Shown here piece after piece: positions 1,530 to 32,746 of a DNA stretch of 64,000 nt. The position numbers were made by a program, and so were the translations under genes. The notes beneath the pieces are model-generated. The model was not told the origin of the DNA. It did no database searches and was given only the letters and a program-made list of their open reading frames with translations. Where the stretch lies: positions 162,074-226,073 of the IMG/VR virus record IMGVR_UViG_3300036846_000743. The stretch is one strand, 5' to 3'. Numbering within the stretch: the stretch's first letter is position 1; every line of letters starts with the position of its first letter.

Positions 1530-2183
1530 TCACGTGTCGATGACCCGCACTCGCGGCGGTCTCGGTACAGCAATTCCCGGCTCAGGGGCCGGTAGTTTCA
1601 CATTCTCGACCAGGGCGGCGAACTTGCCCGAGGCCAGCATGCCGTTATCGGCGGCCTCCTGCAAGACCAGGTCCCTGTCGATGCCGTCGTTGTTGCCGGC
1701 CGCCAGCTTGATCAGGTCCCGCATCACGGACTTGAGCGGCCTGAGCTGGACGGTCGAATCCCAGTCCACCGGCGTCCCGAAGGGCTTCGTGACCGGCGGA
1801 AGCGGATTGTCGAACCCCTTGGACCAGGCCCAGGGCGACATCCCCAGCGCGAGCAAAAACGGCGGCACGATCTCGCGCTCGATCAGCTCCCGGACGCCGG
1901 TCTCGATCAGGTCCAGGAGCGTGTCGATGTGCAGGGCAAGGCAGCGACACCGGAAGTCGACAGCGAGCACGCCGTCGGTCGTCTTCTGGGGCCGGCTCAC
2001 TTCCATGCGCTCGATGATCCGCTCGTGCTCCCACCATTCATTGGGGATCACGACCCCCGGGGTGAGCACCCCGCGGCCCATGATCCGCAAGTAAGGATCA
2101 GCCTTGGCCTGACGCCGCAGTTCCGTGTGCAGCTCCGAGAGGATGACCGACGCGACCGGCGTGCCTGGCGGCGGAGCAGCCAT
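1530..2183 (-). CDS. hypothetical protein with C-terminal RVRVIDT tag
   Basis: AGGAG RBS; 217 aa; ends PRPPRVRVIDT*. Confidence 0.75.
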   Translation of the reverse strand: MAAPPPGTPVASVILSELHTELRRQAKADPYLRIMGRGVLTPGVVIPNEWWEHERIIERMEVSRPQKTTDGVLAVDFRCRCLALHIDTLLDLIETGVRELIEREIVPPFLLALGMSPWAWSKGFDNPLPPVTKPFGTPVDWDSTVQLRPLKSVMRDLIKLAAGNNDGIDRDLVLQEAADNGMLASGKFAALVENVKLPAPEPGIAVPRPPRVRVIDT

Positions 2184-2194
2184 GTCCTGGTCTC

Positions 2195-2575
2195 CTACGT
2201 GTCGATGATCCTGCGGCGAGGTGCAGCCAGCTTCGGCTGGCCAATGGACGATGGCGACTTGGGCTGGGGCGGCGGTCTGGATACTGGCTTCTTCTGCACG
2301 TTGTGAATCACGGCCGTGTCGGGCAGCGGCTTGAGCCCCGGCCCCGACTTCGCCAGGAAGTCCCTGGCCTGGAGCGGGGCCGACTGCATCACGATGACCT
2401 CGCCGGGCCGGACATGCGCGGATCGCTTGATCGCGACGGAGTACGGCCTGTTGGAATACGCCGCGGTCATGGCCAGCTGATCGAGCACGTTGAAGACGTC
2501 GGGCGCGGCCACGAAGATGGTGCCCGGCGCGGCGGTATTGAGCAGATCATTGAGCTGACTGACGTTCACGGACAT
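2195..2575 (-). CDS. hypothetical protein with C-terminal RRRIIDT tag
   Basis: Start at 2575 (MSVNVSQL) or possibly 2686; ends APRRRIIDT*. Confidence 0.7.
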   Translation of the reverse strand: MSVNVSQLNDLLNTAAPGTIFVAAPDVFNVLDQLAMTAAYSNRPYSVAIKRSAHVRPGEVIVMQSAPLQARDFLAKSGPGLKPLPDTAVIHNVQKKPVSRPPPQPKSPSSIGQPKLAAPRRRIIDT

Positions 2576-2678
2576 CAAGCTACCCTGCTTCAAAGGGCAC
2601 CAGGACAGCAGCGGCGAGAAAGTCGCTAAACGCCGCTGCCACCCCGGACCGCCGGAGTGCACGACGGTGCCGTCGATC

Positions 2679-2912
2679 CTACTCATTCACGACCCGGGCC
2701 GCTATCTCACGAATTCTCAGGTCCAAGATCAGGTCCATGGAGCCCCGGGGCTGAGCTTTGCGCTCGTGGTGCAGGCAGAGCGCCTGGATCAGCAGATCGG
2801 GATAGGCAATGCAGCCCTTGTCCATGCTGTAGATCGCCACCGCCGGGCTATCGCACAGCGAGCAGTGCAGGACAGGGCCAAGGCCCCGACCGGGGCTGTC
2901 ACCGCAGGGCAA
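2679..2912 (-). CDS. small Cys/His-rich, possibly Zn-binding protein
   Basis: CSLC...C...CLHH; abuts the upstream gene. Confidence 0.5.
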   Translation of the reverse strand: MPCGDSPGRGLGPVLHCSLCDSPAVAIYSMDKGCIAYPDLLIQALCLHHERKAQPRGSMDLILDLRIREIAARVVNE

Positions 2913-3350
2913 TCACCTGGCCTTGCGGGGCTGCGCGCCCACGTTTCCCGTCGTGATCGGCATGGAGCTGTCCCGGACATCCATGTTCCTCATGCCCTTG
3001 GTCTCCCTGGGCATGGTGATCGGGATCGTGCTGTCGGGCCGTGGCCGCGGCAGCTTCCCGGGCTCGGTGTCCACGACGGGAACAGCCATACCCCCCTGGA
3101 AGACCAGGGAGAACTGACCATCGACGACGCCGGTCGAGATGACCGGATGCTCCTTCAGGTACGCGCAGCCGATCTTGATGAAGCGCTCGATGTGCTCCCA
3201 CGACTCCTGGGGCGGGGAGCCCGGCAGGAAGCTCCCCAGGTAGACGTTGTGCAGCAGATCCAGCAGGTCGATGCCGATGTATGGCTCGTCATCGCCGCCG
3301 GACGTGCCGGCGACCTGTCCCTGCTTCTGTGCGAATTCGTGCGGGTCCAT
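2913..3350 (-). CDS. hypothetical protein
   Basis: 145 aa; TGATG overlap with the upstream gene. Confidence 0.65.
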   Translation of the reverse strand: MDPHEFAQKQGQVAGTSGGDDEPYIGIDLLDLLHNVYLGSFLPGSPPQESWEHIERFIKIGCAYLKEHPVISTGVVDGQFSLVFQGGMAVPVVDTEPGKLPRPRPDSTIPITMPRETKGMRNMDVRDSSMPITTGNVGAQPRKAR

Positions 3351-3694
3351 CAGGTGTCAACTATCCTCCGGCGAATGGAAGGGACCGCAACCGGTGACTT
3401 CGCCCCTGGGCCGGTAGCAGAACTAACCGGCTGGTCATCCAGCGATGAAGGCGGCTGCGGTTGTATCACAGTTTTCTGGGGCCCTGCGTTGATGATCACG
3501 GGCTTCTCGGCGATGGTCTTGTAGAATGGCTTGACTTTCACGGGCTTGCCCGTATCGACGTCAAGTCCCACCAGGCCATTCGCCGCGGGAGCCAGCTGGA
3601 CCACGTAGCCACTGTCCAGCTCGACTGGCTCGGTGGCGGCCAGCTCGGCCCCGACTTGCTCGAAGAAGTCCCGCAAGCATAGCTGCGTTGACAT
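3350..3694 (-). CDS. hypothetical protein with C-terminal RRRIVDT tag
   Basis: GGAG RBS; ends PSIRRRIVDT*. Confidence 0.75.
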   Translation of the reverse strand: MSTQLCLRDFFEQVGAELAATEPVELDSGYVVQLAPAANGLVGLDVDTGKPVKVKPFYKTIAEKPVIINAGPQKTVIQPQPPSSLDDQPVSSATGPGAKSPVAVPSIRRRIVDT

Positions 3695-3698
3695 TTAC

Positions 3699-3911
3699 TC
3701 ACTCCGGCGACTCGTGATCTTCCGGGTGCTGCTGGATGTGCTCGCCCTGCTTCAAGACCTTGTAGTGCATGGCATCGTCCTTGATGGCGAGTGTGACCTG
3801 GAAAGTGGTACCGACAGGATCAACCCGGTTGATCTGGAACGAGATCGTTTCCCCTGTCTTTACATTAACACAGTGTACCCATCGGCCGCACTTTCGCCTT
3901 ACCATGAGCAT
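3699..3911 (-). CDS. divergent CsrA/RsmA-like small protein
   Basis: MLMVRRKCG...ISFQINRV...VTLAI..D...YKVLKQGE follows the CsrA strand pattern MLVLxRKxG...VRLGIxAP...IxRxE; 70 aa. Confidence 0.5.
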   Translation of the reverse strand: MLMVRRKCGRWVHCVNVKTGETISFQINRVDPVGTTFQVTLAIKDDAMHYKVLKQGEHIQQHPEDHESPE

Positions 3912-3933: not shown

Positions 3934-4563
3934 TCACGTCCTTGCGACATCTGATCGGACAGCACTACGAGCAGCCCGCGCGTCATCGATCCCGTGCGAG
4001 ACCTTGGTCAGCGAATCTCGTGCTGCATCGATCAGCGCCATGAGCGACTTGTGCCCGACCAGTCTGGGCATTGCCTGGAGAAGCTGGCCATGGCGTTCGA
4101 TGATGTGCTTGAGCTGCTGGCCATGACGCAGATACTCTCCCGGGGTGAGGTCAGTTAGCACCTTGTGCGCGAATGCAGCGATCTCGGCGAGCTTGATCAG
4201 CTGAGCTACCTCGGAGGCCAGTCCGAGAGCCTCGCGTAGCTTGAGATGACGGGTAGGCTCGGTCATGCGGTTGTCGGGCGTCACCTGGGCCAGCAAGTTC
4301 GCGACTTCCGGGCTGGCCAGCCCGCAGATCTCCTCGAAGGTAAGACCGTAGCCATCCATGGCGTAGATCAGGATGCCGGCGCAGCGCGCCACAATCACGG
4401 AGCTGGTCTCGCCGTCGTAGAGGTGAGCCCGGCGCCCGACGTACTGTTCGGCAAAACGCCCTACGCCCGGCGGATCGGCCCGGCATGGGACGGCGTCTCG
4501 CACGACCAGGTCTCTGTGCGGTAAATAAACATATAGCTCCAGCGCAGTTGGGTCGAGTGGCAT
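3934..4563 (-). CDS. degenerate HD-domain (Mesh1/SpoT hydrolase-like) protein
   Basis: LTFEEI...PEVANLLAQVT.D...ASEVAQLIKLAE resembles the (p)ppGpp-hydrolase scaffold, but the HD and ED residues are absent; GGAGG RBS. Confidence 0.5.
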   Translation of the reverse strand: MPLDPTALELYVYLPHRDLVVRDAVPCRADPPGVGRFAEQYVGRRAHLYDGETSSVIVARCAGILIYAMDGYGLTFEEICGLASPEVANLLAQVTPDNRMTEPTRHLKLREALGLASEVAQLIKLAEIAAFAHKVLTDLTPGEYLRHGQQLKHIIERHGQLLQAMPRLVGHKSLMALIDAARDSLTKVSHGIDDARAARSAVRSDVART

Positions 4564-4637
4564 TGGATCCTCCAATGGTAAATTCCATGAAGATGCCTCC
4601 CGCACCTTACCCAACAAGCACTTGGAGCTTCAATGCG

Positions 4638-5636
4638 TTACTTCTTGTGTTCCGGCGGCTTATGTTCCGGCGGCCGATGCGTTTCGGGTGACCTGGCATG
4701 GTGCTCGGCCGGCTTGGCATGGTGCTCGGCCGGCTTGGCATGGTGCTCGGCCGGCTTGGCATGGTGCTCGGCCGGCTTGGCGTGATGTTCCGCCTGCTTG
4801 GCCGCCGCCTCCTTCTTTTCGGCCTCGCCTTCGGTCTGGAGCCTGGGCGGCTCGACGAACGAACCATCGGGATGGACCGTGCCCTGGGCTGGCACGCTGC
4901 CGAAGCTGGCCCGCCGGGGCAGCCCAAACGCCCCGGTGATGCCGCCACCAGCACTGGGCGGAGTCACAGGCGCGCCGGCCGAGCCGCCAGGTGCTTCCGG
5001 CTGGAAATGGCCATCCGGCGTCCTGGCCGACACGGTACGCATTGTCTTGGGCGCCATCTTGGCCTGTTCGAGCGCCGTGACGACGCGCGAGCCCCGCGGG
5101 GTCACAACCGGGGTGACTGCGCGCACAACCGGCACGCCGCCGGCGATGCCCGTGCCGCTGTGGGTCGGGACCGTCATGTTCGCCATGGCTCGCAGCCGGG
5201 GATCGGCCTTGGCGATCTCATCCTCGTCCATCTCGGCCAGTATATTCATGACTTCGACGCGGGCACGTAGCCGGTCACGGTAGCCAATCTGGTTCTGCCG
5301 GTAGCCATCACCGCCGACGGTATAGGCCGTGCTGTAGCCGCCGCCTCGCTGCCCCTTGGTGGCAACCTGTGGTACTCCGACGTTGCGCAGCTTGGGACGG
5401 TTGGGATAGCGGCGGCCGCTGCGTCCCACGATCGCATCGGGATAACCGTCGCGATCGTAGTCGATCATGACCGGGCTGACCGCCCTGGCGCCGCGCTCGA
5501 CCCGGGCATCGAAGCTCTCGATAGGTCCGCCGCCAGCAGCAGCATCACCATTCTCGATCGCCTCCTTGCGGCGAGCCTTTTCTTCGGGCGTCAGCTGACG
5601 ATGACCTTTGTGCGCTGTCTCGTGTGCTTTGGCCAT
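4638..5636 (-). CDS. low-complexity protein with a DxDxDG motif and His-rich C-terminal repeats
   Basis: AAGGAG RBS; DYDRDGYPD; AEHHAKP repeats followed by PPEHK repeats. Confidence 0.75.
   Translation of the reverse strand: MAKAHETAHKGHRQLTPEEKARRKEAIENGDAAAGGGPIESFDARVERGARAVSPVMIDYDRDGYPDAIVGRSGRRYPNRPKLRNVGVPQVATKGQRGGGYSTAYTVGGDGYRQNQIGYRDRLRARVEVMNILAEMDEDEIAKADPRLRAMANMTVPTHSGTGIAGGVPVVRAVTPVVTPRGSRVVTALEQAKMAPKTMRTVSARTPDGHFQPEAPGGSAGAPVTPPSAGGGITGAFGLPRRASFGSVPAQGTVHPDGSFVEPPRLQTEGEAEKKEAAAKQAEHHAKPAEHHAKPAEHHAKPAEHHAKPAEHHARSPETHRPPEHKPPEHKK
4694..4798. repeat. 21-bp coding tandem repeat (4 perfect copies + 1 degenerate)
   Basis: tggcatggtgctcggccggct at 4694, 4715, 4736 and 4757; variant at 4778; encodes AEHHAKP on the minus strand. 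Confidence 0.95.
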
Positions 5637-5728: not shown

Positions 5729-6385
5729 TCAGAAATGCGCCGCCACAACTCCCGGTTGGTGAATCACTGGCAGCTTGTGCGCGCAGCGCAGATAAGCCCC
5801 GAAATAGTCGGCGTCATGCCGCTCCTGTGCGTGCTTGAAAACGCCCAGCTCACAGGCCCTGATCGTGGGGAAAGCCATGCAGGTCAGATCAACTTCGCCG
5901 GGCCTGAGATCATCGACCGGGTGCTTGCGGCTCGGCCGCACGCCCAGATACATGGGATGCGGCAGCAAGACCTGGGGATTGTATTCGCGCGTCACCCACC
6001 AGTCGATGTCGACCAGCGACAAACAGCCAGGCACCCTGGCGATGTTCTCGGCGTGGGCCAGTAAGTAGTCAGGATACAGCATACAGTCGTGTCCGATGAT
6101 CACCGTGTAGTCGCCGGTCGCCAGCTCCAGCCCGCGGCGGCGTGAGACATTGCCCCATTTACCCGGCGCGCTGGGTAAGGTAACGAAGCTGAACCGCTCG
6201 GGCATGCCCGGTTCCATCAGCGTCGTGAGAAAGTCATCGAAGATAGCGCGGGCAACAGGGTGCGCGCCGTCGGCCACGAAGATCACGTTCCAGTCAGCCA
6301 GCTTTTGCCGCAATATCGTGGAAAGAATATTGGGCATGAGCCCTTCCCGCTCATAAACCGTGACGACGATGGTGAACTGGCTCAT
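5729..6385 (-). CDS. glycosyltransferase family 2 (GT-A)
   Basis: FTIVVTVYER...VIFVADG...RRRGLELATGDY...GHDC: GT2 N-terminal pattern. Confidence 0.8.
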   Translation of the reverse strand: MSQFTIVVTVYEREGLMPNILSTILRQKLADWNVIFVADGAHPVARAIFDDFLTTLMEPGMPERFSFVTLPSAPGKWGNVSRRRGLELATGDYTVIIGHDCMLYPDYLLAHAENIARVPGCLSLVDIDWWVTREYNPQVLLPHPMYLGVRPSRKHPVDDLRPGEVDLTCMAFPTIRACELGVFKHAQERHDADYFGAYLRCAHKLPVIHQPGVVAAHF

Positions 6386-7098
6386 AGCGCGACCCACGGC
6401 TTGATCGGGTGATGTCGGCAGCGGAAGAACGGGTTCCCCAGCCGTTGCTTGTTCCAGGGATCCCTGGTGCGGCCCGGCGAGAGCGAAATGCACTGCATAT
6501 TCAACCGCCACAGACAGTACGCAAATGACAGCTGGTCGCGCCGGCTGCCACGCTCGATCTCGCCCCACCACAGCTCGGAAAGCCGTCTGAGCTGCCCGCT
6601 GTGCCGCCGCAACAAGATCGATGTTTCGTGCAGCTTGTAACCCTTGCTGTCAAAGCCTTCCTCGCAGTAGCGCAGCATCTGGGCCTGAACCACGGCCGGA
6701 TCGTCAACCGGGATGGAGATGACCTGCTCGGCTTCTTCTTCGAGCGTATTCCGCGAAGGATGCCGGAAGCTGGCGATGTCCGGCCCCCGCAGGAACCATT
6801 CGGGGAACCAGGAGATATCGGCCACCGGTTCGTAATTTGCGTCCATCCAGATCGAGTATTCGTACTCCGGAAAACACTCCATGGGATTGTGCTTGTGCCA
6901 GCGGGCCGTACGCACCGGATCGGTCGCGTGTCGCCAGAGCAGCGGCCGCACGACCCACGGCGCTGTGCTGATCTGGGGATCAAGCTCCTTATCGAGGAAA
7001 AGCACATAGTCGAACTGAGGACAGACGAACGATACCTGCGGGCAAGGATCTCGGTCGGCGACGATGCAGGTGTAAAAGACCGTCTTCATGCTGATCAT
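6382..7098 (-). CDS. DUF616 / TOD1-MUCI70-like glycosyltransferase
   Basis: YSIWMDAN, RHPSR...EE and RRDQLSFAYCLW motifs. Confidence 0.8.
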   Translation of the reverse strand: MISMKTVFYTCIVADRDPCPQVSFVCPQFDYVLFLDKELDPQISTAPWVVRPLLWRHATDPVRTARWHKHNPMECFPEYEYSIWMDANYEPVADISWFPEWFLRGPDIASFRHPSRNTLEEEAEQVISIPVDDPAVVQAQMLRYCEEGFDSKGYKLHETSILLRRHSGQLRRLSELWWGEIERGSRRDQLSFAYCLWRLNMQCISLSPGRTRDPWNKQRLGNPFFRCRHHPIKPWVAL

Positions 7099-7919
7099 CC
7101 GCGGTAATGGTGGGTGATGTCCTCGTGGAGCCGGGCCAGGGACATCTCACGGACTTCTCCTCGCCAGTGATAGTCGGCTTCGACGGCGTCATTCCCCGTG
7201 TGGATGTGATAACACCGGGCGATGCTCCGGCACATGTTCTCGTGCAGGAGCCTGAGCTGTCGGTGCGAGTTGAAGTCATGCCCGAGCCGGATCAGTAATT
7301 CGATCTTGTCGAGATGGCCGAAATGATAGGACTCATCGTAGCGAATGCCCAGGTTCCAGCCGTGCCGAGTGATGATGAGCTGAGGCTCGTCCAGCTCAGC
7401 AGTCGGCACTGGCACACCTGCCAGCGCAGCATTCCAGGATGCATGACTGATCCGGAGCATCGGCAGCGAGTAGGCCAGCTTGCCTTTGCCGTCGACGTGA
7501 TCACTCACGATCTCGGCCATGACTTCTTCCCATAGGTCCCATGTAAACCCGCAGTCGCCATCCAGGACGGCTGCGAACTGGGCGCCATGCTCATCGAAAG
7601 CGATGCGGAGGCCCTCGTTGCGGGCGTGGTTAATTCCGGGGCAGTAAAGCAAGCGATCGTCGCGACCCTTGGCCTTGAAGTAGGGATCTTCCCTGAACAC
7701 CAGTTCGCGAAGTCGGCCCCGGTACCCGGGCGCGAGCAGCTTGCAGTAGGCCGCGACCAGCTCCGGGTTCCAGACCCGGTTGATGATCCAGTACTTGGTC
7801 ACGCCGCCCAGTTCTGGCTCCCTGAGTAATTGCTCGAGCACGACCAGCCTGCTGCCTGGCAGATCACGAGGTGGCAGCTCATTGCCCAGGATCCTGATCA
7901 CGAAGAAAAGCGGTCTCAT
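7095..7919 (-). CDS. putative GT-A glycosyltransferase
   Basis: INHARNEGL followed by a DxD motif (VLDGDC); lies in the GT cluster. Confidence 0.6.
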   Translation of the reverse strand: MRPLFFVIRILGNELPPRDLPGSRLVVLEQLLREPELGGVTKYWIINRVWNPELVAAYCKLLAPGYRGRLRELVFREDPYFKAKGRDDRLLYCPGINHARNEGLRIAFDEHGAQFAAVLDGDCGFTWDLWEEVMAEIVSDHVDGKGKLAYSLPMLRISHASWNAALAGVPVPTAELDEPQLIITRHGWNLGIRYDESYHFGHLDKIELLIRLGHDFNSHRQLRLLHENMCRSIARCYHIHTGNDAVEADYHWRGEVREMSLARLHEDITHHYRG

Positions 7920-8953
7920 CGCGTCTTCCACACCTCCCGCGGAACAGCGTCTAACCATGCGGCCTCGAAGTCAAGCCGCCGCTGTTCCAGACCGATCGAG
8001 CAGCCTGCGGATATCCGCGACAATTCGGCCGGTTCGGTGAGGAGCATGAGCGCGTCGATCAGGCTCTGTCGATCTGCCGGCATGAGCAGTGTCAGCTCAT
8101 CGGGGACGAAACTGGCAGCCGAGCAGGGAACCAGTATCGAATTCCTGGGGTTTGCCAGCTCATCGAGCGTCTGGGTGTCGAACCCCACGATGGGCGTTCC
8201 CATGTGGAGCGAGAACAAGGCCCACATGCCGAAGTTGTAGATGGTCGACGAGAGCAGAGTTACCGAGTGCTCGCCACAGCGCAGAAGCTGTTGCTGATAG
8301 TTCACCGGCCGATCGAGAGTCAGCCGGGGCTCGATCTTCGCCAGGTTTTCGAGCCGCTTGACCAGGACACCGCGGCGACCATCCATCGAAACTGTAACCT
8401 GAACAGACTGATCATATTCGAACAACGCCTCGACGACATCGATGACCGAGCCGTCACCGCTATCTTCCGGTCGGTCGACCGGGGGCACGTAAACCTTGAG
8501 TGATCCATCGGGTTGCCGGTTCGTGACCGGCAGCATCGGGCTCCACGGACATAAGGTCGCATTGCGCAAGCCGCGATCCTTGAGTATATGGACCCAGTGC
8601 TGACTGGGAGCCATGACCCGCCAGAACTGCCGACCAGCTTCACCGATCGCGCGCAGATCATCCCAGTCAGGTACCAGGATAGCGCGCTTGCCAGCCTTGG
8701 CCACCCAGGTCGGCTGAGCTGGCTGCGGGCAAAATGTCCAGATCACGATATCGAGCGTGGCCGCCCAGTCAGTAAACCGGATCTGCGAATCATGCCGGAC
8801 CCGTTTGTCCCAGAAACTGCTCACCAGTGGCTTCCTGGGCGTCGGCGTCAGGATGGTCACATCATGCTGCCACTGGCTCATCAGATCGGCGATCTGGATG
8901 GCCGCGTAGGTTGAGATCCGACGTTGCCATCGGGTATAGATGCCGACGTTCAT
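7916..8953 (-). CDS. putative GT-B (GT4-like) glycosyltransferase
   Basis: MNVGIY start; HDVTIL; C-terminal NFGMWALFSLHMGTPIVGFD resembles a degenerate EGFGxxxxEAMxxGxPVI motif. Confidence 0.6.
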   Translation of the reverse strand: MNVGIYTRWQRRISTYAAIQIADLMSQWQHDVTILTPTPRKPLVSSFWDKRVRHDSQIRFTDWAATLDIVIWTFCPQPAQPTWVAKAGKRAILVPDWDDLRAIGEAGRQFWRVMAPSQHWVHILKDRGLRNATLCPWSPMLPVTNRQPDGSLKVYVPPVDRPEDSGDGSVIDVVEALFEYDQSVQVTVSMDGRRGVLVKRLENLAKIEPRLTLDRPVNYQQQLLRCGEHSVTLLSSTIYNFGMWALFSLHMGTPIVGFDTQTLDELANPRNSILVPCSAASFVPDELTLLMPADRQSLIDALMLLTEPAELSRISAGCSIGLEQRRLDFEAAWLDAVPREVWKTR

Positions 8954-8966
8954 TCACCACCCCGGC

Positions 8967-9854
8967 TCAACCAGCCTTCGGCCGGACTTGCTGCGACCGG
9001 TGCGGCATATCCTTTCCGCGATCATAAAGGACCCAATCCAGGTCTTCCGGAAGCGACGCCGCGATGGCGTCTGCCACACCCGGTTCGAGTAGCTCGCGCC
9101 ACTCGTCAACAGTTGAATGGTCTAGTCCCACCGGCCGCGCCTTGCGCTGCTCTTCGACCCAGTGCGGATAAGTGAACATGGTCTTCCCGTCCTGCGCGTA
9201 GCTGTTCGCCGGGCTCGTCATGGCCGGGTCGTAGTCGATCCCGATGAACTCAGCGATCCGTGACATCTGCTGCTCGGGAAAGAGCACCACATCCTCGAAT
9301 CGCACCAGCAGGACCGGCCTGTCAGCATCCAGCGCAGCCACGGCATCACTGGTCATGTGTGCGTAACGGTGCGCGGCGCTGACGGGGTTTTCCTTGTACC
9401 AGGGTCGCTTGCACCACGAGCAGTAAACTGCTCGCGGATCTCTGACCATGACGAGCGTCGGTATGTCCGGCATTTTGGAAAAGACGTGGCTGATCAGGTA
9501 GCCGATGTAGAAAACGCTCCTGTCGACCAGGATATCCCGATCATGGATCCCGTAGTGCGCAACTATATGGTCGAAGACTTCCGCGTACATGCTTTGCCAG
9601 CTACCAGTGGCCCTGATGGTCTTGTCGGCAATCTTCTCCAGTTCGGCTTCAGTTATGACTCGGCCGAGCGGTGGCAGGGGCCCTTCCCCCGATATTGGCG
9701 CAAATGGATCTACGTATGGAGGTTTGGTGTTAATGTTTAGAATCCCCACCTCAGTCTCCGCGAGGATCCGGGGATGAGCCCGCAGCAGGTCCAGCATCAA
9801 GGTGGTGCCGCTGTTCGTGACCCCGCAAAGAGCCAAGACCTTTGTAAGTAGCAT
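8967..9854 (-). CDS. sulfotransferase (Sulfotransfer_3-like)
   Basis: 5'-PSB-like GVTNSGTTLM; 3'-PB VRDPRAVYCS; VRFEDVVLFPE. Confidence 0.85.
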   Translation of the reverse strand: MLLTKVLALCGVTNSGTTLMLDLLRAHPRILAETEVGILNINTKPPYVDPFAPISGEGPLPPLGRVITEAELEKIADKTIRATGSWQSMYAEVFDHIVAHYGIHDRDILVDRSVFYIGYLISHVFSKMPDIPTLVMVRDPRAVYCSWCKRPWYKENPVSAAHRYAHMTSDAVAALDADRPVLLVRFEDVVLFPEQQMSRIAEFIGIDYDPAMTSPANSYAQDGKTMFTYPHWVEEQRKARPVGLDHSTVDEWRELLEPGVADAIAASLPEDLDWVLYDRGKDMPHRSQQVRPKAG

Positions 9855-9878: not shown

Positions 9879-11873
9879 TCAGACATCCACTATCCGCACC
9901 CGCCGAGGTCGCTTCAGCATCAGCCCCGTCGGCACCGGCAGCGGTGCCGCCGCGCCTTGCTTGCCATACTGCTGGGCTAGTACCTGCTGTCCTCCCTGCA
10001 TCTGGGCCTCCTGCTTCTGGTCGTCCATCCGCGACTTGACGAGCGCGTGCAACGTAGGATCAGTCTTCTTGAGGGAGATCAGCTCGCTCTGTCGCTGACT
10101 GTCGGGCAGGCTCTGAAGCTGGCCCGCGATCTCCTCGGCCTTGGCCATCAGTTCCTGGGGTGTAACCGGCGTATTGGCACCACCACCTGCTGCGCCAGCG
10201 GCCCCTCCACCGCCTGGAGGCGCGCCACCCGGAGGAGCGCCGCCACCGCCGCCAGCGTCCGGAGGTGCACCTCCTGCTGGAGCACCTCCCGGCGGCGCTC
10301 CACCCGCAGCAGCGCCTTGGACCGCCTGTTGCATCTGTGCTTCATCGGCCATCTCCTCCTGCATCTTCTGGGTCTCGTCGGCAACGAACTTCTCTTCCTC
10401 CAGCATCTGCTTCTGCTCATCCTCGAAGTCCATGCCGACCGAGCGAAGCCCGGTGGTTTGCGAGATCTGCTTGCCCATCATGAGCTGGAGCTTGGCCGCC
10501 TGACGGTTCATGTCGTCGGCGTGAGTGACCTTCATGAGCCGCGCGGTGACTGGCTCCCAGTTCAAAGCCTTGGCGAGCGATTCGACCAGCCAGCCCAGGA
10601 AGCCATTCATGTTGTGCGTGAGCGGTGCCCAGTAGCTCTCGAAGAGCCGCAGGGCCGGCGGAGCCGCCGACATGGTCAAGGTCCCCTTGTACATGTCGGC
10701 CGGGATACCAGCTGCGTTCAACAGGTGATCAATGCCCTGGTCAAGCAGGTCCTTGGGTGCCAGCTGGTTGGCATCGCCACCCATGGCCTTGTATTCCAGT
10801 GGGAACGGGATCACGTTCCAGCGGGCTGGATCTTTGCGGCGCGCCGCCAGCATGCGGTTCACCCGCGAGACGAACGTACCCATGTTGGCACCGAGCACGG
10901 GATCCTGGGCCGCCGGATCGGCAGCCCCGCCCTTGGACGCCGGCATGATCACCCGGAATGGGATCACGTAGTCCAGGGCGATGGCTTCGTTGTATCTGTG
11001 CAGGACCTGGACGTACCAAGCCTGGCCGAAGTTCGACAGGACTTTCGAGATGCCCCAGCCCTTGTTGCGGACACCGGCTAGAGCATCGTCTTTCATGTGA
11101 TAGATGATGCCGGGGTCGAACTGGAGCATCTTGTTGTTCTTGACCGCCTGGATCACTTCCCAGTTGGCACGCTCGAGATGGAACAGCTTGCCGCGGCGAA
11201 TGTCCTGCCGGTAGTCCTCGGGGATCTTCCAGATGTAGGACGTATCGTCGGTCAACGTGTCATAGAGGATCTCCATGTAGTGGGGGTCCCACCGCTTGAC
11301 ATGAACGTCCGCTTCCTCGCCAGAGCGACGATCGATGTGATGCCAGGCGCCGTTGTAATTGCACTCCGAGTTGGGACACTTGGCATGGAAGTCGAAGTCC
11401 TGCCACTGAAAGTGGAAGTCAGGTGTGCTGTAAACTTTTCGTAAGGGCCACTCGGTATAGCAGCGAGGGCAGCTCAGATAGCGCCGGAACGGTATAACTA
11501 CAGATGTGAATGAGTTTCCGTAGCATGCATAGTCCGTGGCCACGTAGTTCAGGACGCTCTTGTAGTCGATCGTCTCGTCAAGGAACTCCTTGAATTTATC
11601 TTTCTCCTCGCGGCTGGCATCCTGGGAGCTGACTTCGATATCGGTGATGAAGTAAGAGACGATGCGCCTCATGGCCTCCCGGTACACGCCCATCTTGCTA
11701 AAGATGAACTCGCACCAGTACATTATATCTCTGGGATGCTCAGGCATCACAGTTGAAGCCATGTCGCAAAATGGATCTGGGAAATTCTCGCTGCCTCGCA
11801 TCGTGAAGTTCCCCGATGCGAAGAGCTTGTTGTCGCTGACGGTAAGACTCATCGTGTCGTCCTTGACGGCCAA
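9879..11873 (-). CDS. probable portal protein with Zn-ribbon insertion, Gly/Pro-rich tail and C-terminal RVRIVDV tag
   Basis: 664 aa; DYACYGNSF and IYHMKD...GWG segments and Q/G/P-rich tail fit large-phage portals; CPRC...CPNSEC insertion; alternative ATG at 11853. Confidence 0.6.
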   Translation of the reverse strand: MAVKDDTMSLTVSDNKLFASGNFTMRGSENFPDPFCDMASTVMPEHPRDIMYWCEFIFSKMGVYREAMRRIVSYFITDIEVSSQDASREEKDKFKEFLDETIDYKSVLNYVATDYACYGNSFTSVVIPFRRYLSCPRCYTEWPLRKVYSTPDFHFQWQDFDFHAKCPNSECNYNGAWHHIDRRSGEEADVHVKRWDPHYMEILYDTLTDDTSYIWKIPEDYRQDIRRGKLFHLERANWEVIQAVKNNKMLQFDPGIIYHMKDDALAGVRNKGWGISKVLSNFGQAWYVQVLHRYNEAIALDYVIPFRVIMPASKGGAADPAAQDPVLGANMGTFVSRVNRMLAARRKDPARWNVIPFPLEYKAMGGDANQLAPKDLLDQGIDHLLNAAGIPADMYKGTLTMSAAPPALRLFESYWAPLTHNMNGFLGWLVESLAKALNWEPVTARLMKVTHADDMNRQAAKLQLMMGKQISQTTGLRSVGMDFEDEQKQMLEEEKFVADETQKMQEEMADEAQMQQAVQGAAAGGAPPGGAPAGGAPPDAGGGGGAPPGGAPPGGGGAAGAAGGGANTPVTPQELMAKAEEIAGQLQSLPDSQRQSELISLKKTDPTLHALVKSRMDDQKQEAQMQGGQQVLAQQYGKQGAAAPLPVPTGLMLKRPRRVRIVDV

Positions 11874-18631: not shown

Positions 18632-18684
18632 CTTCTTCCTCCACGAGGAATATCAGGTCGACCTTGCTCGGGTTGGTTCCGACT

Positions 18685-19050
18685 TCACTCTGCGGCGGGC
18701 GTCGGCTCCTGGAGGACCGGCTTGTAGACGATGGCCTTCCGGCCGCTCTTGTTGCGCCGGGTGACGCCGGTATCGTACAACTTGTTCATCAGAACCAGCT
18801 CCCGGATCCGGGCCGATACCGTCTGATGCTTCGCGGCCAGGATATCCTCGATCTCCTCGCAGGTTGCCCCGTCGGGCTGCTCCGCGATCGCATCGAGGAC
18901 GATCTGGCCGAGCTGGCTCGCGACGGTCCGCATCGAGATCGCAGCCGCCCATGACGTTGGCTTTCCGACGTGCGGTGGCGTCCCATCGTAGAGGTTGTAT
19001 TCACCATCTGTGGTTACCATCGGCCGTACCTCACGAAAGACGAACTTCAT
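18685..19050 (-). CDS. winged-helix DNA-binding protein
   Basis: GATCEEIE..L..KHQTVSARIREL...DTG..R...SGRKA.V. Confidence 0.7.
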   Translation of the reverse strand: MKFVFREVRPMVTTDGEYNLYDGTPPHVGKPTSWAAAISMRTVASQLGQIVLDAIAEQPDGATCEEIEDILAAKHQTVSARIRELVLMNKLYDTGVTRRNKSGRKAIVYKPVLQEPTPAAE

Positions 19051-19349: not shown

Positions 19350-19662
19350 CTGCAATCTCCTCGTGATCGAAGGTCACGTCGGCCTGGGGCTTGGCCTCGC
19401 CCAGTAACTGATGGTCGCCTTCTCCGTCAGTCATGGCCTCTTCGTCCTCCCAGAGCCCTGCAAACTCCGCGTACGGCGCAGCTTGCTGGTAGATGGTAGA
19501 CAGTCGGGCCTTGACCTGATCGTCGGTCCATGTGGCGGGAACCGCCACATTGAGTCTGGCGAATTGCGGGACCCACCGCTGGAGGCGAATCGCGACCAGT
19601 CGCCGCTCGATCTTGGGCTTCTTGCCCTTCTTCTTGTCTTTCTTCTTGCTGTTCTTCCCCAA
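19342..19662 (-). CDS. hypothetical protein, paralogue of 19047-19349
   Basis: AAGGAG RBS; Lys-rich N-terminus. Confidence 0.7.
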   Translation of the reverse strand: MGKNSKKKDKKKGKKPKIERRLVAIRLQRWVPQFARLNVAVPATWTDDQVKARLSTIYQQAAPYAEFAGLWEDEEAMTDGEGDHQLLGEAKPQADVTFDHEEIADG

Positions 19663-19680
19663 TGCACATTCTCCTTGTCG

Positions 19681-20100
19681 TTAGTCGAGCATGTGCACCC
19701 CGCACCTTTCACCATCGAGCAGCCGCTCCGAGAGCTGCACGAACCCTTTGCTCCGGGGTGATCCGCTCTGATCTGCGGAATTGAAGAGAAAGATCGGGTG
19801 CTTTTCGCAGATATCCAGGAACCGAGTGATGAAGTGGATCGCCACACGTTCACTGACGTGCTGGATATCACGACGACCAGGGTGCCGGTATGTATGCACC
19901 TCCCAGTAGTAAGTCGTGGCCTGACCACCACGTACCCGGAACTTGAAAGACAGCTCGCGCTGATAGCCATACTGGTCGAGTATCTGAACTTCGAGCTTGG
20001 GCACGGCCCCGTCTTTCCCGGGTACGTGCTCGACGTTGTAGATCACGGTCGCCTGCTCGAACTCGTAGAACTTGCGCTCGGTAGGTAAGTCGTCTCTCAC
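19681..20100 (-). CDS. hypothetical protein
   Basis: 139 aa; GTGA overlap with the upstream gene. Confidence 0.6.
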   Translation of the reverse strand: MRDDLPTERKFYEFEQATVIYNVEHVPGKDGAVPKLEVQILDQYGYQRELSFKFRVRGGQATTYYWEVHTYRHPGRRDIQHVSERVAIHFITRFLDICEKHPIFLFNSADQSGSPRSKGFVQLSERLLDGERCGVHMLD

Positions 20101-30234: not shown

Positions 30235-31110
30235 CTAGCTATTACCCTGAATACCAGGTGTGTCCAGGGGATCGCCTTCCTTGACTGCATCTACCCGGAC
30301 CTGGGCCCGTTCACAGTCACTGCTCGACAGCTCGAAGCCGATCCAGTACCGTCCGAGCTTCTTGGCCACGCAGGCCGTGGTTCCAGATCCAAGAAACGGA
30401 TCGAGCACAATGTCTTCCGAGTTGGAGCAGAGCCGGATGATCCGGCCGATGAGCTGCTCCGGGATCTGTGTAGGGGTGCCTGCACGGCTCTTGAAGGTCC
30501 CGTTAATTCTCGGGCAATGCCAGGTCGTCTCACTGGCTTTGAAGCCGTCAGGCAAGTCCTGGGGCCGGATGATCCAAGTATCGTCTGGAAGTCGGCCTTC
30601 CGGGTTGGCTCGCTTGTCATTGTAGATCAGTTGGCGAGCCGACGGCACTCTGCACGCACTCACGTTGAACGTGAATTGATCCTTGTCCTTGACGTAGTAG
30701 AGCAGGTGCGCGTGGCTGCGGGTCAGCTTGTTCTCGGAGTTGACCCCGAAGGTGTAAGTCCAGATCACATGCGACCGCTTGTGCAACCCGAGTCTGGCCT
30801 TGCACATGACGTCGATCTCGGAGACCAGCTCATCAGGTATGAACAACCAGAACGTACCGGTATCGGTCAAGACCCTTACGATCTGGGTCAGCCACTGCAT
30901 GGCCCAGGCCAGATACTCTTCACGGGGCCGATCGTCGTCGTAGTGGTCGCCGTAGTCGATCCCGAAGTTGTAGGGCGGATCAGTGCAAACCAGGGCTACC
31001 GATCCTGGTTCCAGCTTCGACATGCCAACGACGCAATCGCTGTGAAAGATCGCCCCGCGATCGGGATCAACCACTTGGTGAGCGTCACCCCGTGCTCGCT
31101 TCTGGGGCAT
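30235..31110 (-). CDS. orphan N6-A/N4-C DNA methyltransferase (beta class)
   Basis: TDPPY precedes LDPFLGSGTT; no cognate restriction gene adjacent. Confidence 0.9.
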   Translation of the reverse strand: MPQKRARGDAHQVVDPDRGAIFHSDCVVGMSKLEPGSVALVCTDPPYNFGIDYGDHYDDDRPREEYLAWAMQWLTQIVRVLTDTGTFWLFIPDELVSEIDVMCKARLGLHKRSHVIWTYTFGVNSENKLTRSHAHLLYYVKDKDQFTFNVSACRVPSARQLIYNDKRANPEGRLPDDTWIIRPQDLPDGFKASETTWHCPRINGTFKSRAGTPTQIPEQLIGRIIRLCSNSEDIVLDPFLGSGTTACVAKKLGRYWIGFELSSSDCERAQVRVDAVKEGDPLDTPGIQGNS

Positions 31111-31774
31111 CTTGGATCCTCCGTTTGGACTTCTTTTTGGGCGTCTCTTCGGGAATACCCATACTGTAGCTTTCTATCCCGAGCAAGAGACAAAACGCAG
31201 CATCAGCTATGTTATCGACGCCACTGGTCTCGTAGCCTTCCGGATCAAGACCGACCTTGAACAACTCGTTACAGGCGTCGATCACGGCCACCTTGTCGGC
31301 GTTGCCACGCCCGGTGGCCCGCTTCTTGATAGCACCGATCGGGATCCCTTCGCAAGGGATATCGTGTTCCTCGCACCAGCAGGCCACCGTGGCCTTCAGG
31401 GCACCCAGAAACTCGATCGGCCGGGCGGCGCGCGCCAGGATGGCTGTCAGGTTGATCAGATTGGGCATGTCCGGCGGGACGTGCTTCACATCTTCGTAGA
31501 AGACGATCGCTGGCCGGAGCACGGCCAGGAACTGGCGGAGACGGACGAACCGGATCGCACCTGAGTCGTTCGGGCCGGCAGACAGGTCCCACTGACCGAA
31601 TGCCGTTGTGTGCGCTCCTGGAACATAAGGTTCGCCTGGAACAAAGTAAGTATACGCATAACCAGTAGTCGTGGCCAGGTCGAGACCTAGCGCCAGCCGT
31701 AGACCAGGATCCTCGACGGGCTTCCAGTCCCGTTCGAAAAGTCTGGGATCTCTCTGGATCAAAAACTTTGGCAC
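31085..31774 (-). CDS. RuvC-like Holliday junction resolvase
   Basis: LGLDLATTTGYA, FYEDV, IKKRATGRGNADK and DNIADA. Confidence 0.8.
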   Translation of the reverse strand: MPKFLIQRDPRLFERDWKPVEDPGLRLALGLDLATTTGYAYTYFVPGEPYVPGAHTTAFGQWDLSAGPNDSGAIRFVRLRQFLAVLRPAIVFYEDVKHVPPDMPNLINLTAILARAARPIEFLGALKATVACWCEEHDIPCEGIPIGAIKKRATGRGNADKVAVIDACNELFKVGLDPEGYETSGVDNIADAAFCLLLGIESYSMGIPEETPKKKSKRRIQDAPEASTG

Positions 31775-31784
31775 ATCGAACTTC

Positions 31785-32246
31785 CTAACGTCGAATTCGG
31801 TAGAGCCTGATCGGAACGGCAACCGCTTGGTCAGGCGTCAAACCTCTTCTGACCCGCGAGTGCAACGTACCATAGGAGCAGCCTAGCTCCTTGGCCCAAA
31901 CCATAAGTAGTTGTGTTCGGCCATCTTTGGTAGCTAAAACGTTATCTCTCCTGTTGTGGGCTTGGCCGGTCTTGGTTGTCCAACGGCAGTTACCAGGTGA
32001 GTATGATCCGTCGCCGTTCTTACGATCAAGCGTGTGGCCGGCTGGTGGCTCACCCATGTCCGCCAAGAAATTCACAAAACCATTTTTGCCTCGCCATCTC
32101 CGACACACAGCAATGCCACGACCACCATAGCTGTGATAGCTGCGTTCAGCTTCACGCGCGCACCGGTTGAGCATGCTGCGGTACCGCTTGTAGATAGCGG
32201 TCTGCGACTTACCATGCGTGCGAATGCGATCGCCGATCGACATCAT
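31785..32246 (-). CDS. HNH-type homing endonuclease
   Basis: THGKS...M..RC...YGGRGI.VC.RW...F..DMG...TLDR.N....Y.P.NCRW; lower GC. Confidence 0.85.
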   Translation of the reverse strand: MMSIGDRIRTHGKSQTAIYKRYRSMLNRCAREAERSYHSYGGRGIAVCRRWRGKNGFVNFLADMGEPPAGHTLDRKNGDGSYSPGNCRWTTKTGQAHNRRDNVLATKDGRTQLLMVWAKELGCSYGTLHSRVRRGLTPDQAVAVPIRLYRIRR

Positions 32247-32746
32247 GTGTCGATGACCCTTGTCCTTTTTGCTGGTCGCCGAACCGACGCCCGATCCTCA
32301 GCCGCCGTGATCCGTTCGACGATGCTCTGCTCTTGCGAGATCGCCGCGATGATCGACGATCGCTCGGGCTGCGTCGGGACGTAACCTCCACCTCGGAGAT
32401 CTTCACGGACGCTGATTGCGGCCTCGTGCGCTTCCTTGAAGTAGAGGTTGGAGTAAGCGGGCCTCTCCATGACCATACGGCGCGGACCATCAGTGATCTG
32501 GATCGACCATGTCCAGGGGCAACCGGGCTTGGTCGTCCGGTCACTCTGGAAGATGTTGATCCTGACTTCGATCACGATGTCGGACAGCTTCTTGGAGAGA
32601 AAGAATGATCCGACATAATTACCCGCCTTGGTAGGGACGAACCCGTTGAACCAAGAGATCAGGGCAGTATCCTGATCACCGAGGGTGCGGCCGCGCACCA
32701 ACTGATCAGGAATTCGGAAGTGCGTCGGCTCGACAAAGACTTCCAA
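32243..32746 (-). CDS. hypothetical protein with C-terminal RTRVIDT tag
   Basis: AAGGAGGTGA plus TTG; ends PAKRTRVIDT*. Confidence 0.7.
   Translation of the reverse strand: MEVFVEPTHFRIPDQLVRGRTLGDQDTALISWFNGFVPTKAGNYVGSFFLSKKLSDIVIEVRINIFQSDRTTKPGCPWTWSIQITDGPRRMVMERPAYSNLYFKEAHEAAISVREDLRGGGYVPTQPERSSIIAAISQEQSIVERITAAEDRASVRRPAKRTRVIDT

What the first reader, a model, noticed from the sequence alone, without database searches (positions are those of the whole stretch)
1530..32746. Shared C-terminal tag R-x-R-[IV]-[IV]-D-[TV]-COOH on five unrelated proteins, including the probable portal
Seen (checked on the DNA): 1530-2183 ends RVRVIDT*, 2195-2575 RRRIIDT*, 3350-3694 RRRIVDT*, portal 9879-11873 RVRIVDV*, and 32243-32746 RTRVIDT*. 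Each follows a Pro-containing, probably flexible linker. The proteins are otherwise dissimilar, and the codons and stops differ (TGA and TAG), which points to selection on the peptide rather than a DNA repeat. Inference: a phage-specific address label, such as a docking strand for one hub protein (chaperone, AAA+ ATPase, protease or PDZ-like domain), a head-packaging signal or a degron. I know of no described motif of this form.
Basis: partly seen in the sequence, partly recalled or inferred. Interest (0 to 1): 0.85.

Follow-up and report, generated by a model that had tools for sequence, protein, structure and literature searches.

The report
Shared C-terminal tag on phage proteins
An uncultured 226-kb phage puts the same seven-residue tail on its portal protein and at least five unrelated small proteins; relatives keep the tail, change it or lose it as a set, so it looks like a docking label for one shared partner, most likely for tethering accessory proteins inside the capsid, though that purpose is not proven.

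Summary
R-x-R-[IV]-[IV]-D-[TV] occurs five times in the six-frame translation of the window, each time directly before a stop (0.02 expected anywhere). A sixth protein (46875-47627, RVRSIDTD) carries a looser copy that its homologues conserve.

Codons differ and nothing past the stop is conserved. With the last 10 residues removed, the six proteins share no similarity. Orthologues at 35-63% identity keep the tag while their linkers gain and lose residues.

The tag is not private to this phage. It is the local form of a clade-wide motif, [RK]-x-x-R-x-[IV]-x-[LVIF]-(D)-end. This motif sits on portals and on a changing set of small proteins in a large uncultured group of roughly 160-230 kb phages.

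Two portal clades without the tag also lack tagged neighbours. AlphaFold2 and Foldseek confirm the portal fold and put the tag on a disordered tail beyond the crown, the end that faces the capsid interior.

My best reading (about 0.45) is a cargo-loading or tethering peptide, analogous to the T4 capsid-targeting sequence or encapsulin cargo peptides. No partner was identified and no function is shown.

The parts
9879..11873 (-). Portal protein (664-aa ORF from the TTG at 11873; the likely start is the ATG at 11852, giving 657 aa). Ends ...KRPRRVRIVDV.
   Evidence: 26-28% identity to the annotated portal of Salmonella phage Arash and to Vibrio phages, E about 1e-54 to 1e-56. AlphaFold2 model has mean pLDDT 72. 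The listed Foldseek hits are portal, neck or connector structures (phage 812, T4 gp20 entry 6uzc, lambda, HK97), all with probability 1.00.
9882..9902 (-). Tag on the portal: R-V-R-I-V-D-V, directly before TGA.
   Evidence: Relatives have RIRPVDT (L002) and RVRLVDV (L005).
9903..10319 (-). Portal C-terminal extension beyond the crown helix: a disordered Gly/Ala/Pro linker (10161-10319), a three-helix domain (9966-10160) and a disordered tail (9882-9965) that ends in the tag.
   Evidence: AlphaFold2: residues 513-529 and 532-562 have pLDDT below 50; helices 565-629 average about 85 through residue 610, falling to 61 by 621-629; residues 630-657 have pLDDT below 50.
1530..2183 (-). Tagged protein, 217 aa, function unknown. 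Tag R-V-R-V-I-D-T at 1533-1553.
   Evidence: Ten sequences of about 48-60% identity to the window protein all keep R-[VI]-R-V-[VI]-D-[TVI], while the linker varies by about 40 residues. AlphaFold2 gives pLDDT 66 with residues 197-217 disordered. No PDB fold match. No Pfam or PHROG hit.
2195..2575 (-). Tagged protein, about 126 aa (the ORF could extend to 2686). Tag R-R-R-I-I-D-T at 2198-2218; stop is TAG.
   Evidence: The L005 orthologue (19617-20021, 35% identity) ends RQRIVDT.
3350..3694 (-). Tagged protein, 114 aa. Tag R-R-R-I-V-D-T at 3353-3373.
   Evidence: The L005 orthologue (18385-18915, 49% identity) ends RQRIVDT.
32243..32746 (-). Tagged protein, 167 aa. Tag R-T-R-V-I-D-T at 32246-32266.
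   Evidence: The orthologue in the related contig (L013, 63% identity) ends ...RRPERTRVIDT.
46875..47627 (-). Sixth carrier, 250 aa, just downstream of the DNA polymerase gene. Looser tag R-V-R-S-I-D-T (46881-46901) plus one extra Asp.
   Evidence: Thirteen of 15 homologues carry R-x-R-x-[VI]-D-[TVI] followed by 0-5 residues.
2913..3350 (-). Untagged small protein (145 aa) lying among the tagged genes. Conserved in all relatives examined, including tagless ones. Listed as context, not as part of the tag set.
   Evidence: Clustering across seven phages.
3934..4617 (-). Untagged protein (227 aa) that marks the upstream edge of the variable tagged-gene block. Its homologues follow the tubulin gene in relatives.

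Best explanation
The tail is a short linear docking motif at the end of a disordered linker. All carriers in one phage use it to bind one common partner.

Shown here:
- Selection acts on the peptide.
- The tag is conserved in orthologues.
- The motif is found across the clade.
- Portal and accessory genes lack it together in the tagless clades.
- It sits on a disordered tail beyond the portal crown.

Inferred:
- The crown end of a portal faces the capsid interior, so the partner most likely acts inside the assembling procapsid. Candidates are the scaffold or core, the inner face of the capsid shell, an adaptor, or another copy of the tag.
- In this model the twelve portal tails and the small tagged proteins are tethered together. 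A changeable set of accessory proteins, possibly ejected or anti-defence proteins, would then be loaded into the head near the portal.
- The tag would work like the capsid-targeting sequence of T4 internal proteins or the cargo-loading peptides of encapsulins, but it sits at the C-terminus and is shared with the portal itself.
For: Statistics and peptide-level selection.

Conservation in orthologues while the rest of the protein diverges:
- The 1530-2183 family at about 50% identity keeps the tag despite indels of about 40 residues in the linker.
- The three small proteins are 35-49% identical between the window and L005, against 82% for the portal, yet all keep the tag.
- The 46875 and 32243 orthologues keep it too.

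One form per genome:
- The window, L002 and L005 all use R-x-R-x-[IV]-D-[TVI].
- L004, L006, L007 and L009 use R-x-I-x-L-(D) on the portal and on 2-4 neighbours each.

A widely conserved carrier family (alignments A4/A5, 77 cluster representatives analysed) has R.[IV].[LIVF] in the last 12 residues in 84% of members. Only 1.1% of internal 12-residue windows have it.

Joint absence:
- Tagless portals form two clades.
- One locus from each (L008 and L017) has no tagged neighbour, and in L017 the genes between the flanking conserved families are simply absent.
- 59 tagless IMG/VR loci gave one hit among 1381 coding-like ORFs.
- Among loci with at least 5 kb downstream of the portal, 8 of 10 tagged-portal loci and 0 of 40 tagless loci have a further tagged ORF. 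Fisher p = 8e-8, but the loci are not independent; the evolutionary count is about two losses.

Topology: portal fold confirmed; the tag lies on a disordered tail after the crown helix.

Against: - No partner was identified. Nothing in the window has a PDZ, TPR or similar peptide-binding domain detectable by Pfam.
- No carrier has a recognisable fold or family, so none can be called a virion or ejected protein.
- There is no cultured relative and no proteomics. Phage Arash, the nearest isolate, has no tag.
- The interior location rests on portal topology alone. A 50-residue flexible linker could let the tail act before assembly or reach through the channel.
- One carrier (46875-47627) lies in the replication module rather than near structural genes.
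- If the partner were an essential scaffold or shell protein, loss of the portal tag in tagless clades needs a separate explanation. An accessory adaptor or tag-tag pairing fits the joint loss better.
- The fourth core position does not co-vary within a genome (L098: portal R-Y-I-D-F against cargo R-K-I-R-L). Co-variation therefore rests mainly on one class A versus class B split.
Confidence: 0.45

Rival explanations
1. The tag docks its carriers onto a phage-encoded hub outside the capsid, such as an assembly chaperone, a replication or assembly compartment, or a cytoskeletal element. In nucleus-forming jumbo phages the portal and several small unknown proteins gather on the shell hub ChmB; this would be a comparable arrangement.
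For: Relatives encode a tubulin homologue 2-4 genes downstream of the portal, and the tagged genes follow it. [quoted passage not shown] One carrier sits beside the DNA polymerase gene.
Against: Tubulin does not track the tag. It is present in tagless L008 and missing at this locus in the window, L005 and L009. No chimallin-like or multisubunit RNA polymerase hit was found in the 83 kb examined. Capsid docking needs the outer clip end of the portal, whereas the tag is on the crown side.
Confidence: 0.2
2. The tags pair with one another (basic-x-hydrophobic-acidic-hydrophobic strands zipping antiparallel). The twelve portal tails would then capture tagged proteins directly, with no separate hub.
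For: This explains why the portal tag and the accessory carriers are absent together, and why all carriers in a lineage share one form. The logo alternates Arg, Ile, Asp/Glu and Leu, which suits a strand.
Against: It is pure inference. AlphaFold2 leaves the tail unstructured in monomer models. Basic variants such as RRKIRL coexist with an acidic portal variant, RYIDF, in one genome, which does not suit strict self-complementarity.
Confidence: 0.1
3. The tag is read by a host machine. Candidates are an AAA+ unfoldase that recognises basic-hydrophobic C-termini (ClpX-type), a chaperone such as DnaK, or a protease (degron). This would control folding, remodelling or lifetime of the carriers.
For: Basic residues followed by aliphatic ones at a disordered C-terminus resemble known unfoldase and chaperone signals (my own knowledge, not tested). 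The basic variants of the motif (KKRRKIRL, KRPRQVRI) look most like these signals.
Against: A structural portal is an odd degradation substrate. The motif changes between phage lineages and was lost twice together with the accessory genes, which points to a phage-encoded partner. Most variants carry Asp or Glu in and after the core.
Confidence: 0.1
4. The tag is a recognition site for the modifying enzymes encoded beside the portal (sulfotransferase, glycosyltransferases).
For: A sulfotransferase and several glycosyltransferase-like genes flank the portal. The window's form of the tag ends in Thr on five of the six carriers.
Against: Class B tags have no Ser or Thr. L004, L006, L007 and L009 carry tags but have no sulfotransferase at this locus. 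Tagless L008 and L017 keep glycosyltransferases.
Confidence: 0.04
5. The tag is a chance match or a DNA-level element (repeat, promoter, ribosome-binding site or terminator) that happens to translate alike.
For: Three of the six tags contain AGG Arg codons close to the next gene's start, where they could add to a ribosome-binding site.
Against: Only 0.02 matches are expected and five are seen, all in the reading frame and all at the stop. Codons vary synonymously, and downstream spacing runs from overlapping starts to 78 nt. The tag is conserved at the peptide level across relatives.
Confidence: 0.01

Closest known systems
Capsid targeting sequence (CTS) of phage T4 internal proteins (IPI, IPII, IPIII and others)
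   Same: A short peptide is the only thing shared by otherwise unrelated, fast-evolving small proteins of one phage. Those proteins are encoded in a variable locus (PMC3012670). Here the carriers are 35-49% identical between phages whose portals are 82% identical, and the carrier families are replaced between lineages.
   Different: The T4 signal is N-terminal and is cut off by the prohead protease (my own knowledge). This tag is at the extreme C-terminus, is also on the portal, and shows no common cleavage site upstream. Packaging is not shown here.
Encapsulin cargo-loading peptides
   Same: The layout is the same: a C-terminal short motif after a flexible Pro/Gly/Ala-rich linker on unrelated cargo proteins. 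The compartment shell has the same fold as phage capsids (my own knowledge).
   Different: The motif sequence is different, and the binding site is unknown. Encapsulins have no portal, and the shell protein of this phage was not found in the sequence examined.
C-terminal coat-binding ends of scaffolding proteins and prohead proteases (P22 gp8, herpesvirus scaffold, HK97 gp4)
   Same: C-terminal segments anchor internal proteins to the procapsid interior, and the scaffold also recruits the portal (PMC5529062 and PMC12005531, seen in the list).
   Different: Those are single proteins with helical or longer segments. They are not a seven-residue tag shared by six proteins and the portal.
ChmB-centred interaction hub of nucleus-forming jumbo phages
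   Same: The portal and several small proteins of unknown function converge on one phage-encoded hub (PMC10643120). The relatives here encode tubulin, as many nucleus-forming phages do.
   Different: No shared linear motif is described for that hub. No chimallin or ChmB homologue was detected here.
Terminal address tags in general (peroxisomal PTS1 -SKL, microcompartment encapsulation peptides, SUMO-interacting V-I-D-L-T-type strands)
   Same: All are a short terminal or strand-forming motif on a flexible tether, read by one receptor. The R-V-I-D-L form resembles hydrophobic-acidic strand motifs that bind by adding a strand to a sheet (my own knowledge).
   Different: There is no evidence of homology or of any such receptor. 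These are analogies only.

Membership tests
Tailed-phage portal protein (for 9879-11873) | Portal fold (clip, stem, wing, crown) | tested here: met
   AlphaFold2 model with pLDDT 72. The listed Foldseek hits are portal, neck or connector structures, all with probability 1.00.
Tailed-phage portal protein (for 9879-11873) | Sequence homology to an annotated portal | tested here: met
   tblastn against Arash gp204 'portal protein' gives E=2e-54. Pfam and PHROGs give no hit.
Tailed-phage portal protein (for 9879-11873) | Dodecameric ring at one capsid vertex | not testable with these tools
   Needs a multimer model or a particle structure.
T4-type capsid targeting sequence | A short peptide shared by otherwise unrelated proteins of one phage | tested here: met
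   Six carriers with no pairwise similarity outside the tag.
T4-type capsid targeting sequence | N-terminal position, removed by the prohead protease | tested here: not met
   The tag is at the C-terminus in every case. Cleavage cannot be tested.
T4-type capsid targeting sequence | Carriers are packaged in the head | not testable with these tools
   There is no isolate and no proteome.
Encapsulin-type cargo-loading peptide | C-terminal motif after a flexible linker on unrelated cargo proteins | tested here: met
   Disordered tails, linker composition and linker indels.
Encapsulin-type cargo-loading peptide | Binds a pocket on the lumenal face of the HK97-fold shell protein | not testable with these tools
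   The major capsid protein was not located in the 83 kb examined, and no complex prediction tool was available.
Encapsulin-type cargo-loading peptide | Sequence consensus of known cargo-loading peptides | not tested
   No reference sequences were fetched. From memory they are Gly/Ser/Leu-rich, unlike the logo.
PDZ- or TPR-type ligands that use the free C-terminal carboxylate | Motif at a fixed distance from the free carboxylate | tested here: not met
   In 105 tagged tails, 0 (43), 1 (33), 2 (12) or 3-8 (17) residues follow the core. In the window lineage the 46875 family adds 0-5 residues.
DNA repeat or regulatory element | Conservation at the nucleotide level, independent of reading frame, extending into flanks | tested here: not met
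   Synonymous variation, no flank conservation, and all copies in frame at a stop.
Nucleus-forming jumbo phages (Chimalliviridae) | Chimallin shell protein and split multisubunit RNA polymerases | tested here: inconclusive
   None was detected by Pfam or PHROGs in the 83 kb examined. About 143 kb of the contig remains unseen. Relatives do have tubulin.

The most novel reading that the evidence does not exclude
A large uncultured clade of jumbo phages uses a portable C-terminal address peptide, [RK]-x-x-R-x-[IV]-x-hydrophobic, to load a fast-changing repertoire of accessory proteins into the head. The portal's own twelve flexible lumenal tails carry the same peptide, so portal and cargo are tied to one adaptor or directly to each other. 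This would be a cargo-loading system unlike the T4 N-terminal signal, and in principle it could be transferred to foreign proteins.
Probability: 0.3. Interest if true: 0.8.

Novelty: new variant of a known kind. Interest (0 to 1): 0.7.

Why it matters
Very few phage systems have a known rule for which proteins are brought to the portal or into the head. The T4 capsid-targeting sequence is the main one, and it became a tool for packaging foreign proteins.

This tag is a simple, sequence-readable label. It marks a whole set of otherwise unannotatable proteins in hundreds of uncultured large phages as belonging to one interaction network with the portal.

If the label is a loading signal, three things follow:
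- It gives a way to list candidate ejected or anti-defence proteins directly from metagenomes.
- It gives a second, C-terminal handle for engineering capsid cargo.
- It is a natural case of many proteins changing a shared motif together with their partner.

If the partner lies outside the capsid, the tag still defines a new hub-and-peptide network in jumbo phages.

Tried and rejected
- **Family searches.** Pfam and PHROGs on all six carriers and about 50 other window proteins found no family for any carrier and no evident peptide-binding receptor.
- **Nucleotide search.** A search of the window's first 12 kb against cultured phages found no match. The 1573-aa neighbouring protein has no phage match either.
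- **Structure of 1530-2183.** Moderate confidence and no PDB fold match.
- **Portal model.** I hoped the tail would dock back on the portal body. It stays disordered, so there is no evidence for self-binding in cis.
- **Contig walking.** Walking 18 kb beyond the window start found no further tags and no capsid genes, only two giant unknown proteins and glycosyltransferases. I stopped walking after that.
- **Gene presence and absence.** I compared tagged and tagless loci to look for the receptor. Only the tagged family itself, a DNA methylase and a few lineage-bound families separate the two groups. This is confounded by phylogeny and gave no credible receptor.
- **The protein after the portal.** The 345-aa protein could have been a capsid protein or protease, but it looks like a GT-B glycosyltransferase.
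- **Charge-swap co-variation.** The idea that an acidic fourth position switches to a basic one together across a genome was rejected. Portal and cargo in one genome differ at that position.
- **Short contigs.** Contigs carrying the unusual portal variants RTIKV and RRTLIIPD are too short to show neighbours.
- **Phage Arash.** No tag on the portal or any of the 24 CDS in the 21-kb portal region examined.
- **The widely conserved tagged family (A4/A5).** No PHROG or PDB relative, and not detectable in the window.
- **Literature.** Five full-text searches found no description of this motif.
- **Repeated DNA motif.** I looked for one that could fetch many parts of the contig at once. Nothing suitable turned up.

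Full report
**Observation**

All five C-termini read exactly as reported. The genes lie on the minus strand, so each tag sits at the low-coordinate end of its ORF.

A six-frame scan of the whole window finds R.R[IV][IV]D[TV] five times and nowhere else. Every copy is followed directly by a stop codon. Order-2 Markov simulations of the window give 0.02 matches per window anywhere and none at a C-terminus.

- The seven codons differ at most synonymous positions. The sequence after the stop is unrelated from gene to gene, and the distance to the next start ranges from overlapping ATGA to 78 nt.
- With the last ten residues removed, no pair of carriers is similar (best E=0.97).
- The segment before each tag is rich in Pro/Gly/Ala/Ser/Gln. 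AlphaFold2 predicts it disordered in the two proteins modelled.

So this is a peptide-level feature, not a DNA repeat and not chance.

**A sixth carrier**

A crude gene call showed that 46875-47627 ends in AQRVRSIDTD. Thirteen of its 15 homologues in the large protein collection end in R-x-R-x-[VI]-D-[TVI] followed by 0-5 residues. The looser copy is therefore real. In this lineage the fourth residue from the end is free to vary, as it also does in a relative's portal (RIRPVDT).

**Where the window comes from**

The window is the last 64 kb of a 226,073-bp IMG/VR contig. It has no nucleotide match among cultured phages.

- **Left part:** the portal and many unknown genes, flanked by a sulfotransferase and glycosyltransferase-like genes.
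- **Right part:** a replication module. This includes a family A polymerase fused to a UDG-like domain, primase, DnaB-like helicase, UvsX-like recombinase, SbcCD-like nuclease, thymidylate synthase, DHFR and MazG.

The 664-aa ORF is a portal:
- It has weak but significant similarity to the annotated portal of Salmonella phage Arash.
- Its AlphaFold2 model has Foldseek hits that are portal, neck or connector structures with probability 1.00.

After the crown helix (residues 476-511) the model shows about 50 disordered Gly/Ala/Pro-rich residues, a confident three-helix domain (565-629), and a disordered tail (630-657) that ends in the tag.

**Conservation in orthologues**

- In a relative whose portal is 82% identical (L005), the three small carriers are only 35-49% identical. 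Their tails are RQRIVDT, RQRIVDT and RVRVVDI, and the portal ends RVRLVDV.
- All ten aligned sequences of the 1530-2183 family (about 48-60% identity to the window protein) keep R-[VI]-R-V-[VI]-D-[TVI]. The linker before it varies by about 40 residues.
- The 32243 orthologue at 63% identity keeps RTRVIDT.

**A clade-wide motif**

The portal has more than 1000 homologues at E ≤ 1e-10, nearly all unnamed, many on contigs of 160-230 kb. Their tails fall into two kinds:
- About 45 of the best 120 extend past a conserved QQ[YF]GK and end in forms such as LRSIILD, ARSILLDD, GRAIELD, RTRVIEL, LRRIEL or RRARTIKV.
- The rest stop a few Gly/Pro/Gln/Met residues after QQ[YF]G.

I fetched ±10 kb around several of these portals:

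| Locus | Portal tail | Tagged neighbours |
|---|---|---|
| L004 | LRSIILD | GRVIDLD, LRRIELD |
| L006 | ARSILLDD | DRAIDLD, QRVIEL, LRSIDLD |
| L007 | LRHISV | ERVIDLR, RRIEL, RRIELD... |
| L009 | LRRIEL | RRIELGNE, LRVIELP, LRSITLDS, ARIDL |

One carrier family is shared by these four phages (alignment A4). A profile search of 1.84 billion representative proteins found 78 members (77 analysed).
- 84% of them have R.[IV].[LIVF] in their last 12 residues, against 1.1% of internal 12-residue windows.
- The resulting logo is [RK]-x-x-R-x-I-x-L-(D)-end.
- The window's R-x-R-[IV]-[IV]-D-[TV] fits this logo as a lineage-specific form.
- The core can be followed by 0-8 residues. This argues against a receptor that reads the free carboxylate at a fixed distance.

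The A4 family itself is not detectable in the window. The set of carriers changes between lineages while the tag stays.

**Gain and loss**

I built a tree from the first 500 portal residues, leaving out the tail.
- The window's class A portals form a well-supported clade of six, sister to a GRAIELD clade.
- Tag-bearing portals span the deep branches.
- Tagless portals form two well-supported clades (64 and 6 rows).

The simplest reading is an ancestral tag lost at least twice, but the root is only a midpoint.

One locus from each tagless clade (L008 and L017) has no tagged neighbour. In L017 the conserved flanking families stand next to each other with the tagged genes missing.

Among 59 tagless IMG/VR loci (917 kb) there is one strict match in 1381 coding-like ORFs. 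Counting only loci with at least 5 kb downstream, 8 of 10 tagged-portal loci and 0 of 40 tagless loci carry a further tagged ORF (Fisher p = 8e-8). These loci are related to one another, so the honest count of events is about two joint losses.

**What it most likely does**

The layout is a folded domain, a variable disordered linker and a short conserved end. It is shared by unrelated proteins, kept in one form within a lineage, and absent from portal and accessory genes together in the tagless clades. This is what a docking peptide for one common partner should look like. I hold that general statement with high confidence, about 0.85.

Where the partner acts is inference. The tag lies beyond the portal crown, and by established portal architecture the crown faces the capsid interior. 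That favours a partner inside the procapsid, and so a role in tethering or loading the small carriers near the portal.

The closest functional precedent is the T4 capsid-targeting sequence. It is the only conserved element of a diverse, fast-evolving set of internal defence proteins (PMC3012670). The physical layout matches encapsulin cargo peptides more closely.

Because the portal tag is absent wherever the accessory carriers are absent, an accessory adaptor or direct tag-tag pairing fits better than binding to an essential shell or scaffold protein.

I put 0.45 on the capsid-interior tethering model as a whole. The rivals:
- A phage hub outside the capsid, 0.2. The ChmB hub of nucleus-forming phages, which binds the portal and several small proteins, is the model (PMC10643120). 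However, tubulin does not track the tag, and no chimallin was seen.
- Direct tag-tag pairing, 0.1.
- A host unfoldase, chaperone or degron reading, 0.1.
- A substrate mark for the neighbouring modifying enzymes, 0.04.
- A DNA element or chance, 0.01.

**Limits**

- No partner was found. No carrier has a recognisable family or fold, and there is no cultured relative. Arash has no tag.
- My gene calls use a simple third-position GC rule, so start codons are uncertain.
- Only 83 of 226 kb of this genome were read.
- Co-variation between lineages rests mainly on one split (class A against class B). The fourth core position differs between portal and cargo within single genomes.

**Novelty**

Five full-text literature searches found no description of this motif. 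I file it as a new variant of a known kind, namely terminal targeting or docking peptides shared by unrelated phage proteins. It is not a member of the T4 CTS family, because the defining N-terminal position is not met.

Noticed in passing
window 4663-4823: Six tandem copies of a 21-nt unit inside the 3' end of 4638-5636(-). They encode a His/Pro/Glu/Lys-rich heptad repeat at that protein's C-terminus. The L005 orthologue ends in a similar repeat.
   Followed up: no
window 1516-1533, 35234-35251, 57261-57278: The 18-nt sequence CGTTACGCGGCGTATCAC occurs twice exactly and once at 83% identity. It is a near-palindrome (TACGC-N-GCGTA). The 1516-1533 copy overlaps the stop codon of 1530-2183. It could be a regulatory or terminator-like site.
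   Followed up: no
portal homologues P0011-P0120: Portals without the tag end in short Gly/Met/Pro/Gln-rich tails (for example GGGMGGGGMGGGGMPPGGAM). These recall the GGM repeats at the GroEL C-terminus.
   Followed up: no
window about 11360-11470 (portal residues about 128-164): Four invariant cysteines (C128, C131, C159, C164 in the 80-sequence alignment) suggest a zinc-ribbon-like insertion in the portal.
   Followed up: no
window 6382-9854, 63062-63991; L010 19149-20036; L011 16642-18954: There is an unusual density of sugar- and sulfate-transfer genes around the portal and beyond: a sulfotransferase, a GT-B-like protein, a TOD1/MUCI70-like protein, GT2, GT1 and an RGP-like protein. This suggests modification of virion proteins, DNA or host envelope.
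   Followed up: partly
L004 14480-15652, L006 14554-15690, L007 13576-14715, L008 14444-15643: A tubulin-family gene (PF00091) lies 2-4 genes downstream of the portal in many relatives, tagged and tagless alike. It is missing at this place in the window and in L005, where transferase genes sit instead.
   Followed up: partly
window 1-741 and L010 10914-15635: The plus-strand ORF 94-741 is probably spurious. A 1573-aa minus-strand gene runs off the window start. It and a 1277-aa neighbour (L011 12793-16626) have no Pfam hit, and the 1573-aa protein also has no match in the phage collection.
   Followed up: partly
window 47608-51345: A family A DNA polymerase fused to an N-terminal uracil-DNA-glycosylase-superfamily domain (1245 aa).
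   Followed up: no
L005 18942-19157: A 71-aa protein with an Acb2/Tad1-hairpin Pfam hit (the fold of an anti-defence sponge) lies among the tagged genes of the close relative. I found no clear counterpart in the window.
   Followed up: no
window 2913-3350 and homologues: A small untagged protein family is conserved in every relative examined. It always lies next to the tagged genes and has its own conserved C-terminal [SF]-[WF]-G-[IV]-T-G-like motif.
   Followed up: no
L099 13679-15469: A classical AAA ATPase (PF00004, 596 aa) is encoded 2 kb downstream of the tagged family member in one basic-tag relative. No PF00004 hit was found among the roughly 50 window proteins scanned.
   Followed up: no
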